DNA of 64,000 nt, from positions 248,001-312,000 of the IMG/VR virus record IMGVR_UViG_3300042391_000634. One strand, given 5' to 3'. Numbering within the stretch: the stretch's first letter is position 1; each line of letters starts with the position of its first letter. The notes beneath the pieces are model-generated. The model made no database searches. It was not told where the DNA came from and saw only the letters and a list, made by a program, of their open reading frames with translations. Positions 1 to 58,221 of the stretch are shown one piece after another. The position numbers and the translations under genes are program-made.

Positions 1-1
1 T

Positions 2-574
2 ATTTACGATATTGCAGGTAGTAATTACACGGGTTCTTTAATCAATAGTCCAACATATTCAACAGGAAGTTTAACATTGAATGGTTCATCACAATATATT
101 AATATGAACGCTTCAGCTGTAGTACCTGGCGGTGCAAGTTCATATAGTGTATCTACTTGGGTATATAGAACAAGAAATGATGTTGGATACGAAGAAGTAT
201 TAGCTCAATGGACATATGCAAATTCAGGTAATTCATTCTATTTTGGTTTTAATAATAGTAATGTTAGATTTAGTGATACTTGGTATAATGTAACAGTTTC
301 AGGTGCTGGAACTATAAATACTTGGATGAATATTGTTGGAGTTAATTTCGGCGGGTCAAATGCTCATATTTACATAAATGGAAATTTGATGGCGGTCAAG
401 GGTTCTGCATTAACATATACAGGAACTGCAAATATGATTATAGGTAGGCAGGGTGAGTTAGATGGAGAATATTTTTCAGGTAAAATTGGTCAAATATTAA
501 TATACAATAAGGCTTTAAATAAAGCTGAAATTTTAAATAATTACTATTCAACTAAATCTAGATTTGGATTATAA
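2..574 (+). CDS. LamG/concanavalin A-like domain protein (5'-truncated by window edge), probable virion protein
   Basis: Frame open from nt 2; LamG motifs 'WMNIVGV..IYING','IIGR..YFSGKIGQILIYNKAL..EI..NY'; ends KSRFGL like paralog at 1188. Confidence 0.8.
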   Translation: MYDIAGSNYTGSLINSPTYSTGSLTLNGSSQYINMNASAVVPGGASSYSVSTWVYRTRNDVGYEEVLAQWTYANSGNSFYFGFNNSNVRFSDTWYNVTVSGAGTINTWMNIVGVNFGGSNAHIYINGNLMAVKGSALTYTGTANMIIGRQGELDGEYFSGKIGQILIYNKALNKAEILNNYYSTKSRFGL

Positions 575-586
575 AATAAAATAACT

Positions 587-1183
587 ATGGGATTTAATAT
601 AGGAGGTTCTACTTTATCGTCATCAATGTTAACACCGGATGGTGTTATATTACCAAAAAACTTTAAAAGAGTTACAAGTGATATGATTGATAGTGTAGTT
701 AACACAAACTGTACACTTTTATCACAAGGAAATGATAGTACCGGTGGATATGCAATTTCATATCAATTTAATTTAGGTGGATGTGGTGGTACTGAATCTG
801 GTTTATATGTTAAAATAAAAAACACAATTACTTGGTCAAGAATATTTTGTAAATTTACAAATGAAGGTAGTGCCGCATGTTGGACATTTAATCAAAATGG
901 TTATGGTGGACTATCACCTAACTTAGCATCTTATAATACTGGATTAGGTGACATTATATTTCGTTGGGATGCATCAAATGCATTTGAAAATACACAATTT
1001 AATGTACAAACTGGCGCATGTGATAATGAGGCTACAAATTTTATGAGATTCAGTGGTGTCAAATCTTTTTATATGTTTATGAGAAGAAATGATAGTAATA
1101 TTGCCGGAATCGGTCACGGTAGATCTTGTAATTCTACCGGCGGAGGATCTTATTGTACAATATCAGAAATTTATATAATATAA
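587..1183 (+). CDS. Hypothetical Gly/Ser/Cys-rich protein, likely virion-associated
   Basis: 198 aa ORF between two LamG genes; no family recognised. Confidence 0.5.
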   Translation: MGFNIGGSTLSSSMLTPDGVILPKNFKRVTSDMIDSVVNTNCTLLSQGNDSTGGYAISYQFNLGGCGGTESGLYVKIKNTITWSRIFCKFTNEGSAACWTFNQNGYGGLSPNLASYNTGLGDIIFRWDASNAFENTQFNVQTGACDNEATNFMRFSGVKSFYMFMRRNDSNIAGIGHGRSCNSTGGGSYCTISEIYII

Positions 1184-1187
1184 CATT

Positions 1188-1964
1188 ATGCCATTAGATT
1201 TAACAGGAAATAAATTAAATAGTACTTCAATAGGCCCCAAAGGTGAAGTTTTAAAACAAATCTCATCTGATGGTCTGATATTTCATGTTGATGCTGCAAA
1301 TAAAAATTCTTATTTAGGTTCGGGGTCAACATGGGTTGATTTAAGTGGTAACAATAATAATGGTACATTATATAACTCACCAACCTTTGCTTCAAATGAT
1401 GCAATTGGTAATTTAGCATTTAATGGATCAAATCAATACATGCAAGCAAATATCTCATCAACACTATTAAATGGTGATCCAAATTTTACAATTGAAATGT
1501 TTGTAAAAAGAACAGCAACATTAGTCGGTACGGCAGGTGCTTATTGGGGATTGGGACAAGGAGGAACACAAGGATTTGCAGTACAAGGATGGACACCTAC
1601 AGATAATAGAATACATATGGATTTATGGGATTCATCAAGAGTTGATACTCAACAAGATTATCCATTAAACACTTGGGTTCATATTGTTTGGTCTAAAATA
1701 GGTACGGGTATTAGTCCTAGTACGGTTAATTGTTTTATAAATGGTGTTGCGGCAAGTTGTATATCAGGTAGAGAACAAACATCAGGACCAAACTATCCAA
1801 CATCGACCGCAGGTAATGGTATTGCAATTGGAAGAATTGCCGGTAATTACGATGGATACTATGGACAAATGAAAATGGGTGTTTTTAGAGTGTACACAAG
1901 AGGTATATCATTAAAAGAAGCGGCACAAAATTTTAATAGTCAAAAATCAAGGTTTGGTTTATAG
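1188..1964 (+). CDS. LamG/concanavalin A-like domain protein
   Basis: 'GLIFHVDAANKNSY.GSGSTWVDLSGNNNNGTL..P' N-terminus typical of phage LamG proteins; 'RVYTRGIS..E..QNFN'. Confidence 0.8.
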   Translation: MPLDLTGNKLNSTSIGPKGEVLKQISSDGLIFHVDAANKNSYLGSGSTWVDLSGNNNNGTLYNSPTFASNDAIGNLAFNGSNQYMQANISSTLLNGDPNFTIEMFVKRTATLVGTAGAYWGLGQGGTQGFAVQGWTPTDNRIHMDLWDSSRVDTQQDYPLNTWVHIVWSKIGTGISPSTVNCFINGVAASCISGREQTSGPNYPTSTAGNGIAIGRIAGNYDGYYGQMKMGVFRVYTRGISLKEAAQNFNSQKSRFGL

Positions 1965-1988: not shown

Positions 1989-2720
1989 ATGATTACCAAT
2001 CAAGATTTCATAACAGGAAATATCACAACAAATGCTGGTGACTCAGTCCCTTATAGATGGACACACGGTGCAACGACAGAACATATGGGTGATGGTCTTA
2101 TTGTCTATTCACTGATACAACATATGAGAGCAAAAACGTGTGTCTGTATCGGGTCGGGAGGTGGGTTTATACCCCGTATTATGACACAAGCAAGATTGGA
2201 TTTACACAAACAAGGAATATTTGAAGGTAATCCAGATATTAATTGGGGAGACATTGGTGTAACATATATCGTTGACGCATGTAACGGTATTGGAGGTCCA
2301 AATGATTTAGAGGATGAAAACTCATACTATCACAAACAATTCCAACCACGATTAATTAAATCAACATCAGAAGATGCCTACTATAATTTCTTTGTTCTAC
2401 AAGATATAAAGATAGATGTTTTATTTATTGATGGTGATCACTCATATGATGGAGTTAAGTTGGATTTTGATTTGTATTCAAATATTTTATCAGATAAAGG
2501 AATTATTATTATACACGATACCGATCCAAATTACGAGGAAAATCTATTAATATCGGAAGATTCAAAAAAAGACCATCACAGATTCGACGGACCATCAAAA
2601 TTAGTTAAAGAATTAGAAAAAAACCCATCATATAATTTGATTAATTTATATAATTTTCATATATTACCTAATAAACCATCATCAAGTGGTATAACGGTAA
2701 TTAATAAGAAAAATGGTTAA
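1989..2720 (+). CDS. Class I SAM-dependent methyltransferase (Methyltransf_24-like)
   Basis: 'CIGSGGG' motif I; 'IDVLFIDGDHSYDGVKLDF..Y...L...GIIIIHD'. Confidence 0.8.
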   Translation: MITNQDFITGNITTNAGDSVPYRWTHGATTEHMGDGLIVYSLIQHMRAKTCVCIGSGGGFIPRIMTQARLDLHKQGIFEGNPDINWGDIGVTYIVDACNGIGGPNDLEDENSYYHKQFQPRLIKSTSEDAYYNFFVLQDIKIDVLFIDGDHSYDGVKLDFDLYSNILSDKGIIIIHDTDPNYEENLLISEDSKKDHHRFDGPSKLVKELEKNPSYNLINLYNFHILPNKPSSSGITVINKKNG

Positions 2721-3570
2721 ATTATTAACAGTCATAGGTCACGGAACAAATTTACTTTCACATTTCATTGAACATTATCAAAAACATGTTGATGAAATTA
2801 ATATTGCTGTTTATGAAACAGAATTACATCCAAATTTAACAGAAGAAATTAATGAAGTAATTAAAAACTACGAAAAAGTTAATGTTGTTATAACCGTTCA
2901 AGAAAGAGTATTTGATTGGGAAAAAGTAACACAACTTTATAATTTTGTTAAATCAAAACGAAAAGATAGTTGGTATGTTATTGCCGATATTGATGAATTT
3001 CATTTATATCCTAATGACGATTTACATAAATTAATATACGACTGCCAAGAAAATAATTGGGACATTGTAAGAGGTGGTTTTATTGATAGAATTGGTAGAG
3101 GAGGTGAATTTAGTGAATTAGTTAACGATGTATCTATATGGGAACAATTCCCAAATGCGGGGTTCTTTAGATATCCAATGAGTAAAGCATGTCCAAATAA
3201 GATTTGTATTATGAAAGGATATGTTGATGTGACGGCAGGACAACATTATGCTAAAATTAATGACCACACAACATGGAGATGGCAAGGGTGGAGCCATCCA
3301 TTGATTGCACCAATCAAAACACACTCAGTACAAGTTCATCACTTCAAATGGGATTCAACATCAATAGATAGAGTATCAGATGTTGCAAACCTAAATGAAG
3401 ATTATGCGTTTTCAAGTGAATATTTTCAAATGTATAAAGAATTAAAGAAGACAAATTTTAAAATAGATTTATTAAATCCTGATTTTATGTTTGAATTAGG
3501 ATTAAATAAACCCGAATATAACCGTTATAAAAATTGGAATAAATTAATTAAAAAAATCATATCAATATGA
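2713..3570 (+). CDS. GT-A fold glycosyltransferase (GT2-like)
   Basis: 'FIEHY', 'WYVIADIDEF' DxD motif, 'HHFKW'. Confidence 0.7.
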   Translation: MVKLLTVIGHGTNLLSHFIEHYQKHVDEINIAVYETELHPNLTEEINEVIKNYEKVNVVITVQERVFDWEKVTQLYNFVKSKRKDSWYVIADIDEFHLYPNDDLHKLIYDCQENNWDIVRGGFIDRIGRGGEFSELVNDVSIWEQFPNAGFFRYPMSKACPNKICIMKGYVDVTAGQHYAKINDHTTWRWQGWSHPLIAPIKTHSVQVHHFKWDSTSIDRVSDVANLNEDYAFSSEYFQMYKELKKTNFKIDLLNPDFMFELGLNKPEYNRYKNWNKLIKKIISI

Positions 3571-3821
3571 CAAAGGAAGAAAAAGATAAAATTGAACTTG
3601 AACTTGAAACACGTAAAATCAAGGCATTAGAAAAAATTGCAAATTCATTAGATGCACTAACTGTGTGGTTTGAGGAAATAGATAAAGATGAATGGGGAAA
3701 TAGGGTCCAATATTATTTAGCTGAATTTCATAATAAAATAGTGAAAGAAATTCCATTTAAAGAAGAAGAGGAAGAAGAAATTAAAACTGACGATAAGAAA
3801 GTAAAGAAAAATGCGAAATAA
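3567..3821 (+). CDS. Hypothetical charged protein
   Basis: 84 aa ORF overlapping both neighbours. Confidence 0.5.
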   Translation: MTKEEKDKIELELETRKIKALEKIANSLDALTVWFEEIDKDEWGNRVQYYLAEFHNKIVKEIPFKEEEEEEIKTDDKKVKKNAK

Positions 3822-5226
3822 AAAAATCGGAGTAGTTGTTCCATTTAGAAATAGATACGACCAACTTGACATTTTTAAAGAGAGAATTACAAAATATCTT
3901 AGTGAAAAGAACATTTCATATGAAATTATCATAGTTGAACAAGATGATGCTAAATTGTTCAATAGAGGAATGTTATTGAATATAGGATTTACTTATGCTG
4001 AGAAACTTAAATGTAAGTATGTTGTTTTTCATGATATAGATATGTTACCGATTGATGTAGATTATGGTTATAGTACCACCCCATTACATTTGGCCACTAA
4101 TTTCTTAAACAATGAAAGGGAATTATTCGATACCTATTTTGGTGGAGTTACAATGTTTAATGTTAAAGATTTTAAAAAAATAAATGGGTATTCAAACAAA
4201 TATTGGGGTTGGGGATATGAAGATGATGATTTACTTTTAAGATGTGTCGTTAATGATTTAGATTTAGATACATTAATTTTAAAAAACGTAGGAACAAATG
4301 GAACGGCATTAAAATTTAACGGTAACGATGCGTATGTTAAAGGAATTAATAATTTTAATTTAAATAATAATATTACATTTTTTATTTCATTTTATCCTGA
4401 TAATATTAAATGTAATTATATTGACGATTCGGATCAATATAATATATTCACAATACCTGGTTATGACTTCGCCATATCATATAATTCATTTTCAAGATAT
4501 AATTTCTGTACGTTTGATGAAAATAATAACGTATTATATGTTAATTCTAAAATAAAGAAAAATTATAAAACAAACATTTCAATAACAATTAACAATACCG
4601 AAAAAATAATTAAAGTTTATCAAGATGGGGAATTAATTGGTAAAATTGAATCATTTGAGAAACTTCATCAATATAAAAAGCAACCATTTTTTTATATTGG
4701 AACAAGTGACCCAAATAATGAGTTAAATCCTAAATATTTTAAGGGATATTTTGATTCTTTGGCGGTGTATGATACTGTTTTAGAGGATGATGAAATATTA
4801 GAAATTTCACAAAATAAGTATAGAGGATTATTACAAAATTTTGGAAATTATAACTCTGCTGACCTTATTAAATTATATTATGACACTAAGATAATAAAAG
4901 GTTATAAATTAAAAGATTTATCAGGAAATAATAATGATGGTGAAATCATTAATTGTGAAATTACAGACTTAATAGTAGATAGTATATACGAATTATATGT
5001 TCCACATAGGAGAAAATCTCTATTTGAAAGTTTACCTCACGAAGAAAATGGATTTTTAGATAACAAATGGAAAGATCAATCTACTAGATGGAATCAACTA
5101 CGATTTATAAATGAAGTATCTACAAATCACGAATTATTATATAACGATGGATTATCAGATTTAAATTTTGCAGAACACGGAATAACAAACGAAAATAACA
5201 TAACATTTGTAACAGTTGGAATATGA
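3811..5226 (+). CDS. GT7 (beta-1,4-galactosyltransferase-like) with inserted LamG domain
   Basis: 'VPFRNR','FNRGMLLNIG','FHDIDMLP','YFGGV','NGYSNKYWGWGYEDDD'; LamG segment about 4291-4960; GT7 tail 'H..N..RF..DGLSDL'. Confidence 0.85.
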   Translation: MRNKKIGVVVPFRNRYDQLDIFKERITKYLSEKNISYEIIIVEQDDAKLFNRGMLLNIGFTYAEKLKCKYVVFHDIDMLPIDVDYGYSTTPLHLATNFLNNERELFDTYFGGVTMFNVKDFKKINGYSNKYWGWGYEDDDLLLRCVVNDLDLDTLILKNVGTNGTALKFNGNDAYVKGINNFNLNNNITFFISFYPDNIKCNYIDDSDQYNIFTIPGYDFAISYNSFSRYNFCTFDENNNVLYVNSKIKKNYKTNISITINNTEKIIKVYQDGELIGKIESFEKLHQYKKQPFFYIGTSDPNNELNPKYFKGYFDSLAVYDTVLEDDEILEISQNKYRGLLQNFGNYNSADLIKLYYDTKIIKGYKLKDLSGNNNDGEIINCEITDLIVDSIYELYVPHRRKSLFESLPHEENGFLDNKWKDQSTRWNQLRFINEVSTNHELLYNDGLSDLNFAEHGITNENNITFVTVGI

Positions 5227-6656: not shown

Positions 6657-6657
6657 A

Positions 6658-10183: not shown

Positions 10184-10228
10184 TTTCATATGTCAATAAT
10201 AAAGTTTATATTATAAAAAAACACCAAT

Positions 10229-13417: not shown

Positions 13418-13444
13418 AAAAAGGGACATTAAGTCCCTTTTTTT
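13418..13444. terminator. Bidirectional intrinsic terminator
   Basis: AAAAAGGGAC-attaa-GTCCCTTTTT between convergent genes. Confidence 0.85.
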
Positions 13445-14821: not shown

Positions 14822-14822
14822 T

Positions 14823-48497: not shown

Positions 48498-48534
48498 TTT
48501 TACATTTTCACCTTTTTTTATTATATTATAATGT

Positions 48535-50710: not shown

Positions 50711-50728
50711 TTTATTATTTTTTAAGTT

Positions 50729-51352: not shown

Positions 51353-51380
51353 TTCATTTCATTTCATTTTATTTTATTTT
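51346..51380. repeat. Microsatellite (ATTTC)4(ATTTT)3 spanning a stop/start junction
   Basis: Direct reading; on the minus strand gives tandem ATGAA units. Confidence 0.8.
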
Positions 51381-51965: not shown

Positions 51966-52961
51966 TTATTTTGTTTTCCAAAATGAATAAATTCCTTTAT
52001 CTAATTCGTAGAACGGCCACACAAATCTCTCTCTAACTGGTTGACTTTTAACCCACTCCCACATTTTAGTTAGACCTTCTTTTAAATCTGTTTTATGTTC
52101 AAAATCTAACAGGTCAATTGACTTTTGCCAAGTTGGTATAGAGTGTTTAACCTCGTGTCTACCTTCAAAATATTTCACTTCACCTCCACCAACTACTTCA
52201 CGTAAAATTTCGTTAGCTTCATTGATTGAATATTCTTTTACACCACCTAGATTAATTATCTCTTTCGATGCTCTAATATCTTGAGAAGCTTTCCATAATG
52301 GTTCAAGACTGTCATCAATATAACTAAACGCTCTTGTTTGTGTACCGTCACCAAATATTGTCATTGGTTCATTGATTGTGTGTTGATACATCCAAATACC
52401 TAATACGTTTCTATATTTGTCCCATACGTTTTGTTTAACACCGTAAACATTGTGAGGTCTAATGATACACCAATCAAGTCCGTGTTGTTCACCGGCAATC
52501 TGTATATCCATTTCACAACCATATTTAGCGACACCGTAAGGGTCAATAGGTTTAGGAACTTGAATCTCATCAAACATGTTACCATCTTGATGACCATACA
52601 CCGCTAATGTCGATGTGAATACTAATCTTTTAATATTGTGTTTAATACATTGTGTAATAATACGTGATGTTGCAACTAAATTGTTTTGATAGTTATATGT
52701 TCTAATAAATGGTGATAATCCTTCAGCAGCATAAGCCGCAAAGTGATAAACGTAATCAAATTGGTGTCTTTCAAAACATTCTTCAACATTACCATTAACT
52801 AAATTCATCTCCCATAACTCCACTTTAGAATTAACATTTTCTTTATAACCACCACTCATATCGTCTATACCAACAATATGAACATCGGGATGATTTTCAA
52901 TAATGTAATCTGATAATCTTGACCCAAGTAAACCCGCAACTCCTGTAATTAAAATTTTCAT
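51966..52961 (-). CDS. NAD-dependent sugar epimerase/dehydratase
   Basis: 'ILITGVAGLLGS','HFAAYAAEGLS','YGVAK','RPHNVYG','GDG.Q.R.FSY'. Confidence 0.9.
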   Translation of the reverse strand: MKILITGVAGLLGSRLSDYIIENHPDVHIVGIDDMSGGYKENVNSKVELWEMNLVNGNVEECFERHQFDYVYHFAAYAAEGLSPFIRTYNYQNNLVATSRIITQCIKHNIKRLVFTSTLAVYGHQDGNMFDEIQVPKPIDPYGVAKYGCEMDIQIAGEQHGLDWCIIRPHNVYGVKQNVWDKYRNVLGIWMYQHTINEPMTIFGDGTQTRAFSYIDDSLEPLWKASQDIRASKEIINLGGVKEYSINEANEILREVVGGGEVKYFEGRHEVKHSIPTWQKSIDLLDFEHKTDLKEGLTKMWEWVKSQPVRERFVWPFYELDKGIYSFWKTK

Positions 52962-53572
52962 ACTTTATAATAATTTTCTTTTAAATCATTTTCGTTTACA
53001 TAATTTATTTTTTTCATAATGACTTGATAACCATTGTTAACTATTTCTAAATATTTGTGATATCCATGATAAAACGCGTCAGCACCAGTTTTAACTTGCA
53101 TATATTGTTCTTGTTCAAGTCCTCCACCGTAATCGTCAAATATAATATAACCATTATTTTTCAAACAGTAAAATGCATTAACAGCATCTTCTAAAACATA
53201 TTTACACATATGATTACCATCAATGTAAACAAAGTCTAAAAACTCTTTAGTGTCACCGTTATGGTTAAATGTTTTAAAACTATCGGCCGACTCACCTAAA
53301 ATATATGTTACCTTATCTTCATATGGTTTAATATTGTTCTCAATAAATTCATTTGTATTAATATCCATTATATAATGATGTGAACCTTCCTTTTTACAGA
53401 ATTCATCTAAAATATAAACTGAAGAACCACCATACAATGCACCTATTTCTAAACATACTCTTGGTTCATCACCATAGTTAGGTAAAAAATGGTCCCATGC
53501 ATCCACATGATTTAAAAAGAAATAACGTTCTCCTTCTGGATATTTAAAATGTTCGGGGTATTGATATGACAT
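52958..53572 (-). CDS. Class I SAM methyltransferase (Methyltransf_24-like)
   Basis: 'LEIGALYG.S','DFVYIDGNH','GYIIFDDY'. Confidence 0.85.
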   Translation of the reverse strand: MSYQYPEHFKYPEGERYFFLNHVDAWDHFLPNYGDEPRVCLEIGALYGGSSVYILDEFCKKEGSHHYIMDINTNEFIENNIKPYEDKVTYILGESADSFKTFNHNGDTKEFLDFVYIDGNHMCKYVLEDAVNAFYCLKNNGYIIFDDYGGGLEQEQYMQVKTGADAFYHGYHKYLEIVNNGYQVIMKKINYVNENDLKENYYKV

Positions 53573-53574
53573 AA

Positions 53575-54306
53575 TTAATTTTTTTTATACATAAAGTTAT
53601 AAACACCACAATCTTCCACATCACATGAAACGTGTATGTTGTTTAACCATATTTTAGGGGTTTTTGTTGGTGTGTAATCGGATTGACCCCTATTACAAAG
53701 AATTAACCAATCTTCATATGTTTTATAATAGTAATGATTTAATTGAATAATATCTGTAGGGCCGTTGGGATTGAATGGGCCTCTAAAAAAATTCCTATTA
53801 GTGTCCATTAATTTATTTGATGGGTTGTGAGGTAAAGACATTGTTGATTCACTTTTTAAATTCAATAAAGTTTTTATATGATGATTAACATCTTTATCTC
53901 TAAATGTAAATTGTTTTATCAATGAATTTTTATTTTCATTATCTCTAACTAATTTATTATTAGAACCAAACATATACCAGTTCATCGATATTCCAAATTC
54001 ATTATGGTATTCTAATATAAATTCTTTAATATTAGAATGTTTTTTTAGATGTATAAATTCATCACAATCAATGAAGGCAACCCAGTCATAATCATTTTTA
54101 TATTTAGAAATAAAATCATTATACGATTTTACTTGCTTGTGCTTACCTGGAAAATCAACAAGTATAATATTAGGATGGTTAATTTTACATTTCCAATCGT
54201 TTTGATAAATTATAATATCGTCAAAACCTAATTTTAAATGATAATTACACCACTCCTCGATATAATGGTCCTCATCCTTTGCAATACACATAACCGATAT
54301 TCTCAT
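53575..54306 (-). CDS. GT2/GT92-like glycosyltransferase
   Basis: 'IAKDE..YI.EW..YH..LGFD','FIDCDEF','W..FG','LNHY'. Confidence 0.8.
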   Translation of the reverse strand: MRISVMCIAKDEDHYIEEWCNYHLKLGFDDIIIYQNDWKCKINHPNIILVDFPGKHKQVKSYNDFISKYKNDYDWVAFIDCDEFIHLKKHSNIKEFILEYHNEFGISMNWYMFGSNNKLVRDNENKNSLIKQFTFRDKDVNHHIKTLLNLKSESTMSLPHNPSNKLMDTNRNFFRGPFNPNGPTDIIQLNHYYYKTYEDWLILCNRGQSDYTPTKTPKIWLNNIHVSCDVEDCGVYNFMYKKN

Positions 54307-54923
54307 AATGAACTATAGTAGTTGTTTTGTTTTTCTTGACGATCAATCGTCTTATGGTGTTGTATACAATATTCTTCATCTAATGGTAATGATGAAAATT
54401 TCTGACCACCTATTATTCGTTCGTGAACCTTACCATACCAAGTCATTCCTTTACGGTATATTCGTCCTTGAGCATCAGGAAAGTTTACCCATCCTTTTTT
54501 ATTAACATTCCAACCCCATTTATTAATATGTTCTTGTGTTATACCATTAACAGTATTAATACGAGGAACAAATATTAAATCAACCTTTGGATTTAATTCT
54601 AATATCTGATGGAGATTTTTAATTACATATTCACTAACCATTTCATCGGCATCTATTTGATAGATATAATCTCCCTGACAGTAATCATTCAATTTGTTTT
54701 TCCAATCCGCAAAGTTACCACCAAAATCAAACCCTCTCCACGTTTGAACGTGAGGGAATTTATTATATGGTAATAAGAAATCTAATATTTCGGGATTGCC
54801 GTTCTTCTCATCATAGAGAATAACAATCTCATCTTCCTTTCTTTTATGTTCAAATAAAAATGGAACTAATCTTTTTATTTCCTCTAATTCATTACAAACT
54901 GTAATTGCAAAACTTATTTTCAT
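54303..54923 (-). CDS. GT2 glycosyltransferase
   Basis: 'ITVCNE','IDADE','PD.Q.R','VHE','HHK'. Confidence 0.8.
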   Translation of the reverse strand: MKISFAITVCNELEEIKRLVPFLFEHKRKEDEIVILYDEKNGNPEILDFLLPYNKFPHVQTWRGFDFGGNFADWKNKLNDYCQGDYIYQIDADEMVSEYVIKNLHQILELNPKVDLIFVPRINTVNGITQEHINKWGWNVNKKGWVNFPDAQGRIYRKGMTWYGKVHERIIGGQKFSSLPLDEEYCIQHHKTIDRQEKQNNYYSSL

Positions 54924-54924
54924 A

Positions 54925-55167
54925 TTATGCTCTTTGTCCTCTGTTTATTCTTCCCGTTAATATATTTATTACTTCGTTGTCAATTTCTTCCACAATTTGT
55001 TCCGACATTAATCTTGTTAATTCAGCCTCAGCATCAATTCCATGATAATAATTTAAATCATCAACCAATTCAGGTCTCCATTGTGCTCGTAATGTTCTAA
55101 CGATATTCTGAATACCTTCCGATTGAATTGTTATCCCATGAAAAAATCTAAACTGTCTAACTCCCAT
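54925..55167 (-). CDS. Small protein carrying a T4 gp23-like major capsid protein segment
   Basis: 'RTLRAQWRPELVDDLNYYHGIDAEAELTRLMSEQIVEEIDNEVI'; likely ATG at 55167. Confidence 0.65.
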   Translation of the reverse strand: MGVRQFRFFHGITIQSEGIQNIVRTLRAQWRPELVDDLNYYHGIDAEAELTRLMSEQIVEEIDNEVINILTGRINRGQRA

Positions 55168-55168
55168 A

Positions 55169-55399
55169 TTATTGTCTTTCTCTTGTGAATAATTTAAATA
55201 CTCTACCATTATCATTAAATGTCATTTCAGTATTACTCGTTGGACTTAAACGAATACTACAATCATTCGGACCATGAGCAAAAATAACTGGTTCATCATC
55301 ACCAAATTGAAAACAAAATTCAACATTTGATGGTTCAAATGAGACCGGTGTAAAACATAATGTAGGTGTTTCATCACCTTTAAAAAATTTGAAGTTCAT
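55169..55399 (-). CDS. Hypothetical protein
   Basis: 76 aa ORF coupled within the operon. Confidence 0.5.
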   Translation of the reverse strand: MNFKFFKGDETPTLCFTPVSFEPSNVEFCFQFGDDEPVIFAHGPNDCSIRLSPTSNTEMTFNDNGRVFKLFTRERQ

Positions 55400-56661
55400 T
55401 ATTTAACTTTATTTAATTTAGGTAATATTAATTTAGTTTGTTGTGGAGGAGGTTGAAACGCAATTGAATAAGGTTTTAATATCTCACCAAACTTAACTTT
55501 CATTTTTTCTAAAGAAAAATTTTCTTTATTTTCTTCTTTAAGTTTTAATGACTTCAATAAAAAATTACTATAATCATTTTTAACTATTTTCATAATTTCA
55601 GCAGCTTCACCGTAGTTCGCCGTAAACCATTTAGATCCTTTAATGATGAACTGATCAATTGCACTATCGTCAACATCTGTTAATTTACCACCAACCATAA
55701 CGGATTTATCCATAGGTAAAAAATCTTTATGTCCCGACCAATTAGAGGCAATAACGGGTTTTCCTGACATTGTGAATTCTAATAGTGGTCTACCGAATCC
55801 CTCACCTTTAGTAATCGATACCATAGATTTTATTTTTGGATGATTATACAAATCATTCATTTCTTTATTAGTAAGGTCACCAAATAACAAATATATTGAA
55901 GGTGGATTTTGTATATCGGTAACAACATCTTTAATTTTCTTTATAAACAAATCTCTTTCTTTAATTGAGAAATTAGATGATGATGTTTTTAATACTAATG
56001 CCGGCATATCCCTACCATCTTTAAATGATTCAACAAAACATTTAATTAACATACCAATGTCTTTTCTATCTTGACCTATATTACCTTTTAACCAATGACC
56101 AACAAATAAAAATGCAAAGTTTTCTTTTATATCCAATTTAAAATCTTTATTAATTACATCATTAAATATTGATGTATCAACACCCTCAAATAGAACCTCA
56201 ATAGGTTTTTCTATTCTATGTTGTTTAATTATTTCATTTGTATTTTTATTTCTTTCGTCATAAACCGTTGATAATAAAACTTCTTTAGAAAAATTAGATG
56301 TTGCAATAATTAAATCCATTTGATTACAACCATCAACCCAATCTTTAGGGGCTACAGTTGTTTCAATACCTGCGGTGATACCAATGTTAAATTTACCAAA
56401 TCTACGAAACTCATTAGGTACAGTAACTTGAATGTAGATGTCTGGTAATCCTTCAAATCTTGTTGTAATATTAGATTCAATCCATTTATGAAATGTATTG
56501 TCAGGTTCTAATGCAGTCATAGGTGTGTTACCCCATACACAACTATCAATCTTTATATTAAAAAGATTCATTTGATATAATGATTCTAATAAATCTCTTG
56601 AATGTGATCCATAACCACTTCTTGTTTTAACCGGTCCTCTAAATAATATTGTTGGTTTCAT
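55399..56661 (-). CDS. GT4-like glycosyltransferase
   Basis: 'SGYG..SR','FLFVGHW','RK','GEGFGRPLLE','SGH.DF'. Confidence 0.85.
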   Translation of the reverse strand: MKPTILFRGPVKTRSGYGSHSRDLLESLYQMNLFNIKIDSCVWGNTPMTALEPDNTFHKWIESNITTRFEGLPDIYIQVTVPNEFRRFGKFNIGITAGIETTVAPKDWVDGCNQMDLIIATSNFSKEVLLSTVYDERNKNTNEIIKQHRIEKPIEVLFEGVDTSIFNDVINKDFKLDIKENFAFLFVGHWLKGNIGQDRKDIGMLIKCFVESFKDGRDMPALVLKTSSSNFSIKERDLFIKKIKDVVTDIQNPPSIYLLFGDLTNKEMNDLYNHPKIKSMVSITKGEGFGRPLLEFTMSGKPVIASNWSGHKDFLPMDKSVMVGGKLTDVDDSAIDQFIIKGSKWFTANYGEAAEIMKIVKNDYSNFLLKSLKLKEENKENFSLEKMKVKFGEILKPYSIAFQPPPQQTKLILPKLNKVK

Positions 56662-58022
56662 TAAATTACTTTATATAAATTAAATCTCTCTCTTGGAGTG
56701 AAATTTTTTATTGTTTTGTTAATCCCATCACACATTTTATCACACATAATTTTCGATGATAGGTTTTTAATTGCCCATTCTCTTCCCTTTAAACCTCTTT
56801 CTTTTCTTTCTTCTTTAGACCAATTATACATTTCCATTATCGTATCGGCAACATCATTGTTATTAACTCTATCATCGTACAAGTAAGGTGTTAATGGTGA
56901 ACCATTTAAATTAATTGCTGATGACCATATAGGTATAACCCATTCACCATATGGGATAGTTTCATAATCCTTTTTACTGTGTAATGTTTCTATATTTATA
57001 TAATCATTTTCTGTAAACGGAAATCCACATTGGTCTTGTAATCCACCTGTTACATTAACAATAATAGGGGTTCCAGCCATTATACTTTCGGCGGTACCTA
57101 AACCAAATCCTTCATTATTTGCAATGTTAATCGTACAATCAGCAAGATTATATAATTTATTTAAAACATCAGACTCAATTTTAGACTGAGAAAATATTAC
57201 GTCATAATTTGGACATATCTTATCTCTAACAGCGTATAAATCAGTACCATTGTTATCTATAGGAGTTGTGTGCATTAATAAAACACATCTCTTTGATTTT
57301 TCTTTAGGAAGTTTATCACAAAACAACTTAAAAGAATTAATAACATCTGAAGGTTGTTTTCTACGAATATTTCTACTGTTAAAAAACAAAACAAAATCAT
57401 ATTCTTTATCACCAAACAAATCTTTTTTTACATCAATCAATTCTTTATCCTCCAATGGTTTAAATGTATCTTGATTGATACCGTGAGGAACGTAACTAAT
57501 TTGCCAATCTTGTAATGGTTTACAAAAACCGTCATCTAATTTACCAACACGGTGGACAATTCCATATGTTAATTTAGAAATACAACCTAACCAATCACAA
57601 CTTTCGTAGTAGTTTTTATTATATAATGGGTCCGGTGTGTTATCCCAAATATGGTAATAAAGAATTGGAACTTGTTGTCTAATTTCATGTTCATTGTCAT
57701 ATAACCATTGCCAATAGTGAGGATCGGTAAAGTGTAATATTGCATCGATTTTAAATTCACTTAATAATTTTCTTAAAATGTTTATATCACCGTAACTATT
57801 GTATGGTATAATTTTTAATTCAGCATCGGCAATTCCAGTTTTTTCTCTAATGTCGGTATCCACATCAACCATTTTTCCATTTTCAGGATGATTAATACCA
57901 GCACCTAATTGAACCCAATTAAATCTATCTACAGTACCCATTACAATTTCTCTTGACATAGTGGAAATTCCCGATGTCATTCGTAAATCGTCTGATAATA
58001 ATAAAATTCTTTTTTTACCCAT
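56661..58022 (-). CDS. GT4 glycosyltransferase
   Basis: 'LLSDD..TSG','VPHG','RN.RRK','NEGFGL..AE....G.P','TGG'; likely ATG at 58022. Confidence 0.85.
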   Translation of the reverse strand: MGKKRILLLSDDLRMTSGISTMSREIVMGTVDRFNWVQLGAGINHPENGKMVDVDTDIREKTGIADAELKIIPYNSYGDINILRKLLSEFKIDAILHFTDPHYWQWLYDNEHEIRQQVPILYYHIWDNTPDPLYNKNYYESCDWLGCISKLTYGIVHRVGKLDDGFCKPLQDWQISYVPHGINQDTFKPLEDKELIDVKKDLFGDKEYDFVLFFNSRNIRRKQPSDVINSFKLFCDKLPKEKSKRCVLLMHTTPIDNNGTDLYAVRDKICPNYDVIFSQSKIESDVLNKLYNLADCTINIANNEGFGLGTAESIMAGTPIIVNVTGGLQDQCGFPFTENDYINIETLHSKKDYETIPYGEWVIPIWSSAINLNGSPLTPYLYDDRVNNNDVADTIMEMYNWSKEERKERGLKGREWAIKNLSSKIMCDKMCDGINKTIKNFTPRERFNLYKVI

Positions 58023-58023
58023 A

Positions 58024-58221
58024 TTAATATTTTGACCCACTCACAGATAAATCTGTGTAATTGTTTATTTTATTTCTAAATGCATCATCTTTAACATAAA
58101 GATCTAATGTACGATTAACTAATTTTTGTAGGTTAATATTACCATCAATTGCATTTATTTTAAATTTTCTGTAAACGTCTTCCAATACATGGACACTCGT
58201 TAATTTTTTTTCTACTTTCAT
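58024..58221 (-). CDS. Small ribbon-helix-helix-like protein
   Basis: 'LTSVHV....Y..FK......LQKLVNR.L.LY' pattern; first gene of the GT operon. Confidence 0.45.
   Translation of the reverse strand: MKVEKKLTSVHVLEDVYRKFKINAIDGNINLQKLVNRTLDLYVKDDAFRNKINNYTDLSVSGSKY

What the first reader, a model, noticed from the sequence alone, without database searches (positions are those of the whole stretch)
1..58221. About 57 kb phage-encoded glycan synthesis and decoration island bracketing virion genes
Seen: roughly 20 GT-like domains, four SDR domains, RmlC, an NDP-sugar dehydrogenase, five non-DNA methyltransferase domains, a carbamoyltransferase, APS kinase and a sulfotransferase. They are interleaved with LamG and tail fibre genes, and I found no flippase, Wzy, ABC exporter or undecaprenyl-phosphate priming transferase. 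Known: cell-surface polysaccharide loci need export functions, while giant viruses and some phages glycosylate their own virion proteins. Inference: a cytoplasmic pathway builds a heavily decorated virion glycan coat.
Basis: inference. Interest (0 to 1): 0.7.

Follow-up and report, generated by a model that had tools for sequence, protein, structure and literature searches.

The report
Jumbo phage fibre-glycosylation gene island
A complete 335 kb T4-like phage carries a sugar-chemistry island of about 57 kb, with about 20 glycosyltransferase domains and no export genes, and the evidence points to it sugar-coating the phage's own serine-rich, collagen-like fibres, although this has not been shown experimentally.

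Summary
The window is bases 248001-312000 of a single 335,630 bp IMG/VR phage record. CheckV rates it 100% complete, it has a T4-type gp23 capsid gene, and its ends overlap.

I count 18 supported glycosyltransferase (GT) domains plus 2 DUFs. The four SDR domains, the NDP-sugar dehydrogenase, five methyltransferases, the carbamoyltransferase and the APS-kinase-like gene are all present. The sulfotransferase is only weakly supported. The "RmlC" is closer to Campylobacter GDP-heptose 3,5-epimerases.

The whole genome has no priming transferase, flippase, polymerase or ABC exporter.

New evidence:
- Two genes pass NCBI's curated cut-off for Aah/TibC protein O-heptosyltransferases. The catalytic Asp and the four iron-finger Cys are conserved.
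- One of them sits 65 nt upstream of a tail fibre whose collagen-like repeats are Gly-Ser/Thr-Ser.
- 59 of 97 TibC-centred IMG/VR loci hold such an ORF, against 0 of 80 capsid-centred loci.
- Four more such fibres (5 in all, 689 triplets) lie just upstream of the window.

Verdict: virion (fibre) O-glycosylation is the best-supported reading, at about 0.5. Host-surface remodelling, the usual reading of cyanophage clusters, is not excluded. This is a new variant of a known kind.

The parts
2..1964 (+). The last two of five tandem LamG (Laminin_G_3) paralogues (w2-574, 5' end outside the window; w1188-1964), with an unknown 198 aa ORF (w587-1183) between them.
   Evidence: Pfam Laminin_G_3, E 7e-19 and 1e-8. 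Paralogy to genome 245428-247627. PHROG 8510 'virion structural protein'.
1989..3570 (+). A Methyltransf_24 methyltransferase (w1989-2720) and a weak GT2_4-like ORF (w2713-3570).
   Evidence: E 2.6e-11, and E 0.002 (below the cut-off).
3811..6656 (+). Two paralogous fusions of a GT7 (beta4GalT-type) domain with LamG (w3811-5226, w5223-6656).
   Evidence: Pfam GT7N/GT7C/LamG. The best solved relatives are beta4GalT7, E 3.5e-29, against beta4GalT1 at 2.4e-23.
6640..11683 (+). A 940 aa protein with a C-terminal twitch radical-SAM domain (w6640-9462), a paralogue of its middle part (w9446-10183), and a second twitch radical-SAM protein (w10229-11683).
   Evidence: NCBIfam NF033640, E 3e-91 and 3e-88, above the cut-off. 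Paralogy.
11686..12984 (+). A copy of the divergent GT-B family 'A1'.
13443..22819 (-). Minus-strand operon. In transcription order: a Cj1427-like SDR (w21833-22819), an SGNH-like ORF (w21016-21849), a GDP-heptose-type 3,5-epimerase (w20474-21019), a TPP E1-alpha-like ORF (w19845-20477), two A1 GT-B genes (w18673-19884, w17442-18680), an SDR-2OG oxygenase-SDR fusion (w14823-17435), an SGNH-like ORF (w13988-14851) and a TPP E1-beta-like ORF (w13443-14045).
   Evidence: Pfam. PDB 6vo6, E 5e-103. PDB GDP-D-glycero-4-keto-D-lyxo-heptose epimerases, E about 1e-33, against true RmlC at 1e-21. GDP-fucose synthase / GDP-mannose 3,5-epimerase-like domains. SGNH assignment.
22881..26593 (+). An A1 GT-B gene (w22881-24155), an NDP-sugar dehydrogenase (w24157-25332) and another A1 GT-B gene (w25295-26593).
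   Evidence: TIGR03026, E 6e-40, below the cut-off.
26593..31194 (+). Two GDSL/SGNH paralogues (w26593, w27333), DUF5672 (w27916-28665), a NodU/CmcH-type carbamoyltransferase (w28669-30336) and an SGNH-like ORF (w30460-31194).
31215..32252 (+). Putative sulfate-activation module: an APS-kinase-like P-loop protein (144 aa), a 127 aa HxGH nucleotidyltransferase-like ORF, and a DUF2061 membrane peptide.
   Evidence: Pfam APS_kinase, E 4e-19. TIGR00455, E 8e-20, below the cut-off. DUF2061, E 9e-17, and CTP_transf_like at only E 0.08.
32280..33770 (+). An unknown 496 aa protein with a Cys-rich C-terminus. It is preceded by the GTATTTATA motif.
   Evidence: No Pfam, NCBIfam or PHROG hit. Motif.
33921..35904 (+). 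An unknown 176 aa ORF (w33921-34451; a 2OG-oxygenase reading rests only on position and an HxD-like string and was not confirmed), an Asp/Arg-hydroxylase-type 2OG oxygenase (w34403-34996), a 2OG-FeII_Oxy_3 oxygenase (w35010-35591) and a Cys-rich 103 aa ORF.
   Evidence: A syntenic 2OG set, plus a SET domain, occurs in a relative. w33921 has no family hit.
35907..38319 (+). A Sulfotransfer_2-like ORF (w35907-36596, weak support), a GDSL/SGNH ORF (w36598-37266) and a radical-SAM protein (w37267-38319).
38337..39467 (+). A stand-alone Aah/TibC-family protein O-heptosyltransferase homologue (376 aa).
   Evidence: PDB 4rap TibC, E 1e-50, full length. TIGR04414, 264 bits against a cut-off of 200. 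D110, K230, W305 and the four Cys are conserved, while T226 is G and R286 is I.
39754..40557 (+). An SGNH-like ORF.
   Evidence: It is 60% identical to its counterpart in the relative L035.
40588..46105 (+). Conserved modification cassette: a GT4 plus FkbM-methyltransferase fusion (w40588-43323), a Methyltransf_24 gene (w43314-43982), and a fusion of GT-A, a beta-sandwich and a TibC-like domain (w43982-46105).
   Evidence: TIGR04414, 282 bits. The same genes lie next to a collagen-like fibre on other viral contigs, 45-52% identical where the terminase-like ORF is 28%. They are fused in Microcystis phage Mel-JY01.
46170..48197 (+). A tail-fibre protein (675 aa) with 39 Gly-Ser/Thr-Ser/Asn triplets (aa 89-205) and a C-terminal Peptidase_S74 chaperone. 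It is the proposed acceptor.
   Evidence: Pfam. PHROG tail-fibre families. Triplet composition. It starts 65 nt after w43982 and is preceded by GTATTTATA.
48279..48978 (+). Two small conserved ORFs of unknown function (72 aa, Gly/Ser-rich; 147 aa).
   Evidence: 94% and 79% identical in the 339 kb relative. No family hit.
48975..49610 (+). An Anp1/GT2-like glycosyltransferase.
49598..58040 (-). Minus-strand operon. In transcription order: GT4 (w56661-58040), a GT4-like gene (w55399-56661), a small FKFF-motif ORF (w55169-55399), a gp23-fragment ORF (w54925-55215), GT2 (w54303-54923), GT2_4/GT92 (w53575-54306), a CmcI-type methyltransferase (w52958-53572), an SDR (w51966-52961), DUF3431 (w51369-51965), an O-methyltransferase (w50729-51352) and GT2 (w49598-50710).
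   Evidence: Mosaic conservation in the relative L035.

Best explanation
The window is the core of a glycan-biosynthesis island in a complete, roughly 335 kb T4-like jumbo phage of an unknown low-GC aquatic host. The island covers about 57 kb here and continues outside the window.

**Proposed mechanism**
- The island works in the infected cell's cytoplasm on the phage's own fibre proteins.
- Five fibre genes, four directly upstream of the window and one inside it, carry 689 collagen-like triplets. These are almost purely Gly-(Ser/Thr)-(Ser/Asp/Asn), so they offer more than a thousand hydroxyl side chains.
- Neighbouring ORFs also carry Pro-Thr-rich linkers.
- Two Aah/TibC-family enzymes (w38337 and the C-half of w43982) start O-glycosylation on serine.
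- One operon (w21833, w20474, w14823) resembles the Campylobacter GDP-heptose 4-oxidation, 3,5-epimerisation and 4-reduction pathway. It remodels a host-supplied nucleotide-heptose or related GDP-sugar.
- About 18 further GT domains extend the glycan.
- Methyltransferases, a carbamoyltransferase, SGNH acyl-transfer or esterase paralogues, 2OG oxygenases, radical-SAM enzymes and a sulfation module decorate it.

**Shown**
- The gene content and the viral origin.
- The absence of export and priming genes.
- TibC-family membership by sequence, with the catalytic residues conserved.
- The genomic coupling of TibC-like genes to Ser-rich collagen-like fibre genes.

**Inferred**
- The acceptor, the donor sugar, and that the whole island serves one product.
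For: 1. **Phage identity and completeness:**
2. **No export or priming function.** The window has no polytopic membrane protein, and the genome has no PGT, WecA-type enzyme or ABC exporter. No island ORF has an N-terminal hydrophobic segment.
3. **TibC-family membership.**
   - w38337 and w43982 score 264 and 282 bits on the NCBIfam equivalog TIGR04414, 'autotransporter strand-loop-strand O-heptosyltransferase', whose cut-off is 200.
   - They hit the TibC structure 4rap at E 1e-50 to 1e-52, against 0.06 for the LPS heptosyltransferase WaaC.
   - The catalytic Asp110, Lys230, Trp305 and the iron-finger Cys339/342/358/370 defined in PMC4358343 are invariant in 14 phage homologues.
4. **Position.** w43982 ends 65 nt before the fibre gene w46170. 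Four giant collagen-like fibre genes and five LamG genes lie directly upstream of the island.
5. **Coupling to collagen-like ORFs.**
   - 59 of 97 TibC-centred IMG/VR loci hold an S/T-rich collagen-like ORF within 10 kb, against 0 of 80 MCP-centred loci of the same phage group.
   - In the closer subfamily, 22 of 28 evaluable loci have that ORF starting 49-76 nt downstream on the same strand.
   - A 735 kb phage of another lineage has the pair within 3.6 kb.
6. **The cassette travels with the fibre.** The fibre plus GT4-FkbM plus methyltransferase plus GT-A/TibC cassette is 45-52% identical in contigs whose terminase-like ORF is only 28% identical to this phage's, and whose flanks differ. In Mel-JY01 a GT4/FkbM-TibC-like fusion follows a 'structural protein'.
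7. **Heptose link.**
   - The 'RmlC' matches Campylobacter GDP-D-glycero-4-keto-D-lyxo-heptose 3- and 3,5-epimerases at about 1e-33, against 1e-21 for true RmlC.
   - The adjacent SDR matches 6vo6 at 5e-103.
   - w14823 has GDP-fucose-synthase-like domains.
8. **Other protein-directed hints.** The GT7 domains are closest to beta4GalT7, which acts on Xyl-O-Ser of proteins. Asp/Arg-hydroxylase-type and other 2OG oxygenases are present here, and a SET domain is present in a relative.
9. **Shared upstream motif.** GTATTTATA precedes the terminase-like, portal-like and protease genes, three upstream fibre genes, w46170 and w32280. This is a weak hint of co-expression.
10. **Mosaic gene replacement** between this island and a 339 kb relative fits selection on an exposed glycan.
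Against: - There are no experimental data of any kind. The phage is uncultured.
- The TibC cassette is 3-4 genes out of about 55. Nothing ties most of the other enzymes to the fibres except position.
- Similar but smaller clusters in jumbo cyanomyoviruses are read in the literature as host LPS or capsule modification (PMC12801897, PMC7824862). The host could supply the lipid carrier, priming, flipping and export.
- The sugar-binding Arg286 of TibC is replaced by an aliphatic residue in nearly all phage copies, and Thr226 is replaced in w38337. The donor may therefore not be ADP-heptose, and activity is unproven.
- Known TibC acceptors are beta-helical autotransporters, not collagen-like triple helices.
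- The genome has no sugar-1-phosphate nucleotidyltransferase, so all precursors must come from the host.
- The co-folding test of w38337 with the fibre repeat gave no answer.
- About a third of TibC-like viral loci have no collagen-like ORF nearby.
Confidence: 0.5

Rival explanations
1. Host-envelope remodelling. The island makes or alters host LPS, O-antigen, capsule or another surface polysaccharide during infection, using the host's lipid carrier, priming transferase, flippase and exporters. The purpose would be to block superinfection or change grazing and adsorption. This is the reading proposed for P-SSM2, S-SCSM1 and S-SCSM2R.
For: - The gene families match cyanophage 'LPS / cell-wall synthesis and modification' clusters: SDR epimerases and dehydratases, a cupin epimerase, many GT families, a carbamoyltransferase, 2OG oxygenases and O-methyltransferases (PMC7824862; PMC12801897).
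- The heptose-modifying enzymes are closest to capsule enzymes of Campylobacter.
- Missing export genes say little for a phage.
- Mosaic gene replacement also fits O-antigen-like diversification.
Against: - The genome has no membrane-associated or lipid-carrier-dependent step at all.
- The GT9 genes are of the protein-specific Aah/TibC type, not the LPS WaaC/F type.
- Those genes are coupled to fibre genes across viral contigs.
- The SGNH paralogues lack signal peptides, whereas known surface-glycan O-acetylation by SGNH domains is extracytoplasmic (established knowledge).
- A lytic T4-like phage has little time to rebuild a surface polymer (inference).
Confidence: 0.25
2. Split function. The TibC cassette (w38337-w46105) glycosylates the fibres. 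Most of the rest of the island makes something else, such as a host-surface glycan, a soluble oligosaccharide or a sugar-derived secondary metabolite.
For: - On smaller viral contigs the cassette occurs with the fibre but without the rest of the island.
- The enzyme set resembles orthosomycin-type oligosaccharide antibiotic clusters: a TPP E1 alpha/beta-like pair, radical-SAM enzymes, 2OG oxygenases and many methyltransferases. This comparison is from my own knowledge and was not tested.
- Iyer et al. raise a secondary-metabolite option for a cyanophage cluster.
Against: - There is no PKS, NRPS, aglycone or resistance/export gene.
- About 20 GT domains are far more than any known oligosaccharide metabolite needs.
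- The heptose-modification operon and the heptosyltransferase homologues lie in different parts of the island, which suggests one connected pathway.
Confidence: 0.15
3. DNA hypermodification. The GTs glycosylate modified bases in phage DNA, as in T4 and its relatives.
For: - The phage is T4-like.
- The A1 GT-B model aligns with T4 alpha- and beta-glucosyltransferases at Z about 10.5.
- Phage GTs that hypermodify DNA with diverse glycans are known (cited in PMC12619734).
Against: - The genome has no thymidylate-synthase-like dCMP or dUMP hydroxymethylase, while the control search found the family in 10 of 14 genomes.
- The structural similarity to T4 AGT/BGT is no better than to any other GT-B, and the best hit is a GT10 fucosyltransferase.
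- Two N6/N4 DNA methylase ORFs next to the island suggest ordinary methylation.
- The TibC family, LamG fusions and beta4GalT7-like domains are not DNA enzymes.
Confidence: 0.03

Closest known systems
Aah/TibC bacterial autotransporter heptosyltransferases (BAHT; TIGR04414; PDB 4rap)
   Same: - Homology runs the full length, at E 1e-50 to 1e-52 and 264-282 bits against a cut-off of 200.
- The catalytic Asp110, Lys230, Trp305 and the four iron-finger cysteines are conserved.
- The enzymes are cytoplasmic and soluble.
- The gene sits directly upstream of a repetitive, Ser-rich surface fibre, as with tibC-tibA and aah-aidA.
   Different: - The genes are encoded by phages, with at least 399 viral loci.
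- The neighbour is a collagen-like Gly-Ser/Thr-Ser fibre, not a beta-helical autotransporter.
- Arg286 is replaced in almost all phage copies, and Pro300 becomes Ser or Gly.
- The enzyme is often fused to GT-A, GT4, FkbM or other methyltransferase domains.
- The donor sugar and the oligomeric state are unknown.
'LPS / cell-wall synthesis and modification' clusters of jumbo T4-like cyanophages (P-SSM2, S-SCSM1, S-SCSM2R)
   Same: - The backbone is a T4-like jumbo phage.
- The clusters hold SDR epimerases and dehydratases, a cupin epimerase, several GT families, a carbamoyltransferase, 2OG oxygenases and O-methyltransferases.
- There are no export genes.
- Gene content varies between relatives.
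   Different: - This island is larger: about 20 GT domains, against 13, which was called possibly the highest in a marine phage (PMC12801897).
- The phage has no psbA, so it is not a typical cyanophage.
- It adds TibC-type protein GTs, twitch radical-SAM enzymes, a TPP pair, a sulfation module and an expanded SGNH family.
- It lies next to, and is interleaved with, fibre genes.
Campylobacter jejuni capsular heptose-modification pathway (C4-dehydrogenase Cj1427, C3/C5-epimerase Cj1430, C4-reductase Cj1428; PMC10680097)
   Same: - w20474 is closest to the solved GDP-D-glycero-4-keto-D-lyxo-heptose epimerases.
- w21833 matches 6vo6 at 5e-103. From memory, and unverified here, 6vo6 is Cj1427.
- w14823 carries GDP-fucose-synthase-like reductase domains.
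- All three lie in one operon.
   Different: - The genome has no GDP-heptose synthesis genes, that is, no nucleotidyltransferase.
- The reductase is part of an SDR-2OG oxygenase-SDR fusion.
- The substrate has not been tested. A GDP-mannose-derived 6-deoxyhexose is also possible.
Virion glycosylation in mycobacteriophages (Freeman et al. 2023, cited) and in giant viruses (Mimivirus fibrils, chlorovirus capsid; my own knowledge)
   Same: Virus-encoded cytoplasmic GTs and sugar-nucleotide enzymes lie next to structural genes and act on the virus's own surface proteins.
   Different: - Mycobacteriophages use one to a few GTs on capsid and tail-tube C-termini.
- The giant viruses infect eukaryotes.
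- Here glycosylation is only inferred, the proposed acceptor is a collagen-like fibre, and the enzyme set is far larger than in any phage case.
Glycosylated collagen-like surface filaments of bacteria (Bacillus BclA exosporium nap; my own knowledge)
   Same: Collagen-like repeats rich in Thr or Ser carry O-linked oligosaccharides with unusual, methylated deoxy-sugars. The sugars are made by a dedicated locus.
   Different: That system is bacterial, its repeats are Gly-Pro-Thr, and its GT families differ. No homology was tested here.

Membership tests
Aah/TibC protein O-heptosyltransferases (BAHT) | Full-length sequence membership above a curated threshold | tested here: met
   TIGR04414 equivalog scores 264.2 bits (w38337) and 281.9 bits (w43982) against a cut-off of 200. 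PDB 4rap matches at E 1e-50 and 3e-52 over about 350 residues.
Aah/TibC protein O-heptosyltransferases (BAHT) | Catalytic base Asp110 and the iron-finger Cys339/342/358/370 (PMC4358343) | tested here: met
   All five residues are conserved in both window copies and in 12 other phage homologues.
Aah/TibC protein O-heptosyltransferases (BAHT) | Four ADP-heptose-binding residues: Thr226, Lys230, Arg286, Trp305 | tested here: inconclusive
   Lys230 and Trp305 are invariant. Thr226 is kept except in w38337, where it is Gly. Arg286 is Ile, Leu, Val or Thr in 13 of 14 phage copies. The donor may differ.
Aah/TibC protein O-heptosyltransferases (BAHT) | The acceptor is a beta-helical autotransporter passenger encoded next to the GT | tested here: not met
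   The phage has no autotransporter. The adjacent gene is a collagen-like tail fibre.
Aah/TibC protein O-heptosyltransferases (BAHT) | Dodecameric ring; heptosyl transfer to serine | not testable with these tools
   This needs biochemistry or structure work.
Cell-surface polysaccharide loci (Wzx/Wzy- or ABC-dependent) | A polyprenol-phosphate priming transferase (Bac_transf or WecA/MraY type) | tested here: not met
   PF02397 and PF00953 are absent from the whole genome, while the control genomes gave hits.
Cell-surface polysaccharide loci (Wzx/Wzy- or ABC-dependent) | A flippase, polymerase or ABC exporter (polytopic membrane proteins) | tested here: not met
   No ORF has more than 4 predicted hydrophobic segments, and none in the window has more than 2. 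The only PF00005 matches are a marginal 147 aa P-loop ORF and the APS-kinase-like ORF.
Jumbo cyanomyovirus LPS / cell-wall modification clusters | A T4-like jumbo phage with a cluster of SDR, cupin, multiple GT, carbamoyltransferase, 2OG oxygenase and O-methyltransferase genes | tested here: met
   The description of the clusters is in PMC7824862 and PMC12801897.
Jumbo cyanomyovirus LPS / cell-wall modification clusters | A cyanophage (photosystem gene psbA, cyanobacterial host) | tested here: not met
   No PF00124 match. The nearest cultured relatives by MCP are a Microcystis phage and Flavobacterium phages at about 41% identity. The host is unknown.
T4-type DNA glucosylation / glycan hypermodification of DNA | A dCMP or dUMP hydroxymethylase (thymidylate-synthase fold) that provides the hydroxymethyl acceptor | tested here: not met
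   PF00303 is absent from the genome, while 10 of 14 control genomes gave hits.
Collagen hydroxylation-glycosylation (LH3/COLGALT1; Mimivirus L230 type) | Lys or Pro in the X/Y positions as hydroxylation and glycosylation sites | tested here: not met
   The 689 triplets have X = Ser or Thr in about 97% of cases and Y = Ser, Asp, Asn or Ala. None has Pro or Lys. The GT-A fold similarity to LH3 and COLGALT1 is generic.
Campylobacter GDP-heptose modification enzymes | A cupin epimerase of the GDP-4-keto-heptose subfamily rather than dTDP-rhamnose RmlC | tested here: met
   The eight best PDB hits, at E 1.5e-33 to 4e-32, are a tight group. Five are named as GDP-D-glycero-4-keto-D-lyxo-heptose (3- or 3,5-) epimerases or for that pathway (8dcl, 8dco, 8db5, 8dak, 7m14/7m15). 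Three (7ang, 7an4, 7ani) are deposited as 'thymidine diphospho-4-keto-rhamnose 3,5-epimerase'; from memory, unverified, these are Campylobacter heptose-pathway enzymes. Classical dTDP-4-dehydrorhamnose epimerases come at 1e-21 or worse. The substrate was not tested.

The most novel reading that the evidence does not exclude
Aquatic phages widely use a virus-borne branch of the Aah/TibC protein O-heptosyltransferase family to hyperglycosylate Ser/Thr-rich collagen-like fibres. In this jumbo phage that minimal fibre-plus-enzyme cassette has grown into a pathway of more than 57 kb and about 20 GT domains. The product would be a mucin- or proteoglycan-like fibre 'glycocalyx' made entirely in the cytoplasm without any lipid carrier, built from modified heptose and decorated with methyl, carbamoyl, acyl and sulfate groups. 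The beta4GalT7-like GT7 domains, the NDP-sugar dehydrogenase and the sulfation module leave open a glycosaminoglycan-linker-like chemistry on Ser-Gly repeats.
Probability: 0.35. Interest if true: 0.85.

Novelty: new variant of a known kind. Interest (0 to 1): 0.68.

Why it matters
Virion glycosylation has been demonstrated in only a few phages, with one or two GTs. Large sugar clusters in jumbo phages have been filed, without tests, as host-LPS modifiers.

Three things follow if this island decorates the phage's own fibres:
- Phage particles in natural waters may carry complex, hypervariable glycan coats. These would affect adsorption, host range, resistance to proteases and grazers, and stickiness to organic matter.
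- The BAHT family would gain a large viral branch with a new class of acceptor.
- The unexplained sugar clusters of jumbo phages would get a directly testable function.

The TibC-like gene and fibre pair is small enough to test by co-expression in E. coli without culturing the phage. The island is also a source of unusual sugar-tailoring enzymes.

Tried and rejected
- **Giant-virus origin.** I considered it because of the collagen, GT7, Anp1 and DUF3431 genes. I rejected it: there is no NCLDV capsid, the capsid is T4 gp23-type, and the genes are packed in operons.
- **T4 late promoter.** TATAAATA is not associated with gene starts, occurring before 12 of 405 genes. A different motif, GTATTTATA, is enriched, but its meaning is untested.
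- **Profile search of the A1 family** against PDB sequences gave nothing useful. Only a predicted fold identified it as GT-B.
- **Co-folding of w38337 with fibre residues 60-230.** The result was 'no answer', score 0.00, with the partner poorly folded. This counts neither for nor against binding.
- **Collagen-type prolyl or lysyl hydroxylation followed by glycosylation.** Rejected, because the repeats contain no Pro or Lys. Hydroxylation of Asp or Asn in the Y position by the Asp/Arg-hydroxylase-like enzyme remains speculation.
- **Literature searches** for phage TibC-like enzymes and for glycosylated collagen-like phage fibres found nothing relevant. No paper on Mel-JY01 is held. 'Moraphages' (PMC12619734) are another lineage.
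- **Identity of PDB 6vo6.** I recall it as Cj1427 but could not verify this. The depositor's name is only 'putative sugar-nucleotide epimerase/dehydratase'.
I repeated it without that row.
- **SDR-centred loci** were fetched as a second control. They belong to the same island in relatives, so they are not an independent control (10 of 31 hold a collagen-like ORF).

Full report
**What the window is**

The 64 kb window is positions 248001-312000 of a single 335,630 bp contig with 31% GC. The record is an IMG/VR virus that CheckV rates 100% complete. Its last 126 bp repeat bp 11-136, so the assembly closes on itself.

The genome has a T4-type major capsid gene (Pfam Gp23, E 2e-63) and no NCLDV capsid. 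The nearest cultured relatives by capsid protein are Microcystis phage Mel-JY01 and Flavobacterium 'immuto' phages at about 41% identity. Uncultured huge phages are also near. IMG/VR holds 549 loci encoding a relative of the capsid protein, and the best 80 are 75-87% identical, so this is an abundant uncultured group. There is no psbA.

**Checking the observation**

- *GT domains from Pfam.* Twelve GT domains are visible: two GT7, two GT9/TibC, two to three GT4 and five GT2-type or Anp1. Two of the twelve are below threshold.
- *The A1 family.* Five paralogues of about 410-430 aa have no Pfam hit, and a sixth lies elsewhere in the genome. They have 342 metagenomic homologues, all annotated 'hypothetical'. 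An AlphaFold model from a 34-sequence alignment (pLDDT 90.7) matches only GT-B glycosyltransferases. The best match is the H. pylori GT10 alpha1,3-fucosyltransferase at VIA Z 11.2.
- *The N-domain of w43982.* It is a virus-only family. It folds as GT-A followed by a beta-sandwich (pLDDT 85.5, Foldseek probability 1.00).
- *Total.* That makes 18 GT domains, plus DUF5672 and DUF3431, which I did not test.
- *Confirmed as claimed.* Four SDR domains, the NDP-sugar dehydrogenase, five non-DNA methyltransferase domains, a NodU/CmcH-type carbamoyltransferase and an APS-kinase-like protein are all present.
- *Weakly supported.* The sulfotransferase (w35907) rests only on Atlas features and structure and on a PSB-like loop. 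Pfam gives nothing.
The SGNH family has 9 ORFs in the window and at least 7 elsewhere, and two subfamilies are joined by hhalign at 98% probability. There are also a DUF2061 peptide and a small HxGH nucleotidyltransferase-like ORF next to the APS-kinase-like gene.

**Absence of export genes**

A hydropathy scan of all 405 ORFs finds no protein with more than four hydrophobic segments, and none in the window with more than two. Searches of the whole genome for Bac_transf, Glycos_transf_4 and ABC_tran find no priming transferase and no real ABC transporter, while the control genomes gave hits. No island ORF has an N-terminal hydrophobic segment. It is a weak argument by itself, because a phage could use host machinery.

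**Surroundings**

Directly upstream of the window lie four giant proteins of 893, 1631, 1200 and 1241 aa with long collagen repeats. Next to them are an 1106 aa protein and a 113 aa ORF with Pro-Thr-rich linkers. Five tandem LamG paralogues follow, and the last two of these open the window.

Inside the window, w46170 is a fifth collagen-repeat protein with a Peptidase_S74 chaperone end and many PHROG tail-fibre hits. The repeats are unusual. Of 689 Gly-X-Y triplets, X is Ser or Thr in about 97%, and Y is Ser in 75% and otherwise Asp, Asn or Ala. None has Pro or Lys. These five genes hold 17% of all Ser codons of the genome.

**The key enzymes**

w38337 and the C-terminal half of w43982 are 60% identical to each other. 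Both are full-length homologues of TibC, the E. coli autotransporter O-heptosyltransferase.

- They match PDB 4rap at E 1e-50 and 3e-52, against 0.06 for the LPS heptosyltransferase WaaC.
- They score 264 and 282 bits on the NCBIfam equivalog TIGR04414, whose cut-off is 200.
- The functional residues come from the TibC structure paper (PMC4358343). The catalytic Asp110, Lys230, Trp305 and the four iron-finger cysteines are invariant in both copies and in 12 other phage homologues.
- Arg286 is replaced by an aliphatic residue in 13 of 14 copies, and Pro300 by Ser or Gly.

The fold, the catalytic machinery and the oligomerisation motif are therefore kept, but the donor pocket differs.

**Coupling to the fibre**

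- w43982 ends 65 nt before the fibre gene w46170.
- On other viral contigs the same four genes (fibre, GT4-FkbM fusion, Methyltransf_24 gene, GT-A/TibC fusion) occur together. They are 45-52% identical to the window's copies, while a terminase-like ORF on those contigs is only 28% identical and the other flanking genes differ.
- In Mel-JY01 a 1226 aa protein whose C-terminal part is TibC-like follows a 'structural protein'. My stop-to-stop reading of that ORF (1234 aa) also matches the window's GT4-FkbM protein at 42% identity over 442 aa.
- In the 735 kb phage LR756501 a TibC-like gene lies 3.6 kb from a Gly-Ser/Thr-Ser ORF.
- A profile scan found at least 399 viral loci with a TibC-like gene.
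- Of 97 fetched loci, 59 hold an S/T-rich collagen-like ORF within 10 kb. None of 80 capsid-centred loci of the same phage group (1.38 Mb) does.
- In the subfamily at least 48% identical to w38337, 22 of 28 evaluable loci have that ORF starting 49-76 nt downstream on the same strand.
- After 95% dereplication, 20 of 60 clusters have the ORF immediately downstream, and 26 of 37 have one within 8 kb.

This repeats the tibC-tibA and aah-aidA arrangement, in which the GT gene sits directly upstream of its repetitive acceptor. It is the strongest evidence that the acceptor is the fibre.

**A matching sugar pathway**

Five are named for GDP-D-glycero-4-keto-D-lyxo-heptose or its pathway. Classical dTDP-rhamnose epimerases score only about 1e-21.
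- The SDR two genes upstream in the same operon (w21833) matches PDB 6vo6 at 5e-103 over its full length. I recall 6vo6 as the GDP-heptose C4-dehydrogenase Cj1427, but I could not verify that.
- The 870 aa SDR-2OG oxygenase-SDR fusion carries GDP-fucose-synthase-like and GDP-mannose-3,5-epimerase-like domains.
- Together these reproduce the Campylobacter scheme of 4-oxidation, 3/5-epimerisation and 4-reduction (PMC10680097).
- The genome has no sugar-1-phosphate nucleotidyltransferase, so the starting nucleotide-sugar must come from the host.
- The replaced Arg286 may reflect a GDP-linked or modified heptose donor. This is inference.

**Other hints and the relative**

- The GT7 domains are closest to beta4GalT7, the enzyme that extends Xyl-O-Ser on proteoglycan core proteins (E 3.5e-29, against 2.4e-23 for beta4GalT1).
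- A 339 kb relative has a syntenic island. Some genes are 85-96% identical and others are replaced outright. It also has a SET-domain protein and extra 2OG oxygenases. Such mosaicism is typical of loci under diversifying selection for an exposed glycan.
- A motif, GTATTTATA, lies 11-35 nt before start codons and is about ninefold enriched in intergenic regions. It precedes the terminase-like, portal-like and protease genes, three upstream fibre genes, and in the window w32280, w46170 and w48279. This may mark late co-expression but is untested.

**Rivals**

- *Host-surface remodelling.* This is the published reading of similar cyanophage clusters and remains possible for most of the island. 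Against it are the complete lack of membrane-linked steps, the protein-specific type of the GT9 enzymes, their coupling to fibre genes, and the cytoplasmic location of the SGNH paralogues.
- *Split function.* The cassette would serve the fibres and the rest something else. This fits the fact that the cassette travels without the rest of the island on smaller contigs.
- *DNA glycosylation.* This is unlikely. The genome has no thymidylate-synthase-like hydroxymethylase, and the GT-B similarity to the T4 enzymes is generic.
- *Secondary metabolite.* There is no scaffold, resistance or export gene.

**Comparison and novelty**

The island belongs to the known kind 'sugar-biosynthesis clusters of T4-like jumbo phages'. 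It is larger than any described there: 13 GTs was called possibly the record in a marine phage (PMC12801897). It also contains elements not reported for such clusters.

The TibC-like genes meet the sequence and catalytic-residue criteria of the BAHT family. They fail the 'autotransporter acceptor' criterion and differ at one donor-binding residue. I therefore file them as a viral branch that probably works like TibC on a different acceptor.

I found no paper describing phage TibC-like enzymes or glycosylated collagen-like phage fibres. JGI's automatic annotation already names homologues 'autotransporter strand-loop-strand O-heptosyltransferase'.

**Verdict**

- The best explanation is fibre O-glycosylation, at about 0.5 confidence.
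- This is a new variant of a known kind, with interest 0.68.

The model can be tested without culturing the phage by co-expressing the fibre repeat with the TibC-like enzymes.

Noticed in passing
window 54925-55215 (-), with a small ORF at 55169-55399 (-); relative L035:21705-22173: A 96 aa ORF is 51% identical to residues 349-405 of the phage's own major capsid protein (Pfam Gp23, E 2e-13; PHROG major head protein). It sits inside a GT operon and is 80% conserved at the same place in a 339 kb relative. It therefore looks functional rather than a remnant, but its role is unknown.
   Followed up: partly
genome 3301-17493 (outside the window), and window 54925-55399 (-): About 19 small ORFs in a row begin with a shared N-terminal motif, M-x(1-4)-F-K/R-F-F/L. 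The two small ORFs in the island's GT operon share it, including the gp23 fragment (MGVRQFRFFHG). One of the 19 (genome 12980-13453) also weakly matches the N-terminus of Gp23. This may be a targeting or processing signal.
   Followed up: no
whole genome; window 32258-32266, 46142-46150, 48244-48252: The motif GTATTTAT(A) lies 11-35 nt before start codons and is about 9-fold enriched in intergenic regions. It precedes structural and fibre genes. A variant, GATATTTATA, precedes many small genes at 4-60 kb. The canonical T4 late promoter TATAAATA is not enriched.
   Followed up: partly
window 13988, 21016, 26593, 27333, 30460, 36598, 39754, 58571, 62283; genome 83785, 316520, 317389, 330951-334676: The genome has an unusual expansion of at least 16 cytoplasmic SGNH/GDSL-like paralogues, none with a signal peptide. 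This is far more than any known glycan O-acylation or esterase need.
   Followed up: partly
genome 330951-335232 and 266-3311 (across the contig ends): A second sugar-related cluster holds four SGNH paralogues, a 2OG oxygenase paralogous to the middle of w14823, a possible sulfotransferase-like ORF, a beta-keto-acid cleavage enzyme (BKACE, E 2e-65), a hexapeptide acyltransferase, a short DegT-like aminotransferase ORF, and a stand-alone paralogue of the GT-A N-domain of w43982.
   Followed up: partly
genome 237887-241568 (L005:11887-15568): A 113 aa ORF and an 1106 aa protein lie between the collagen-like fibres. Both are full of Pro-Thr repeats (PTPTPT, TPDPTATPTS), which are mucin-like linkers and further candidate O-glycosylation sites.
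   Followed up: no
genome 124971-126746 (L001): The major capsid protein is 591 aa. It has a Ser/Thr/Gly/Ala-rich insertion of about 230 residues (roughly aa 105-340) relative to its T4-type relatives, which align in two pieces covering only about 55%.
   Followed up: no
genome 90452-91590 and 86275-86679: Four tRNA genes were found: Glu, Ser(UGA), Met and Thr(UGU). ARAGORN also calls a tmRNA-like gene. The Ser and Thr tRNAs read the codons TCA and ACA, which are the commonest in the genome and are further enriched in the fibre genes.
   Followed up: partly
window 59247-60588: Two adjacent, overlapping N6/N4 DNA methylase ORFs lie just past the island. One is weak (E 5e-7) and one is clear (E 5e-27). 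They may be a split or duplicated gene.
   Followed up: no
window 32280-33770: A 496 aa protein has no detectable family, one internal hydrophobic segment and a C-terminus packed with cysteines (CPTYACNSGCGYYCPSCPKNQSC...). It heads an operon behind the GTATTTATA motif.
   Followed up: no
L035:2112-2477 (339 kb relative, ENA ERZ28595032): The relative's island carries a SET-domain (protein lysine methyltransferase-type) gene and four 2OG oxygenases, where this phage has three oxygenase-like ORFs and a stand-alone TibC-like gene. Other relatives fuse DUF3431, GT2 or methyltransferase domains to the TibC-like protein.
   Followed up: partly
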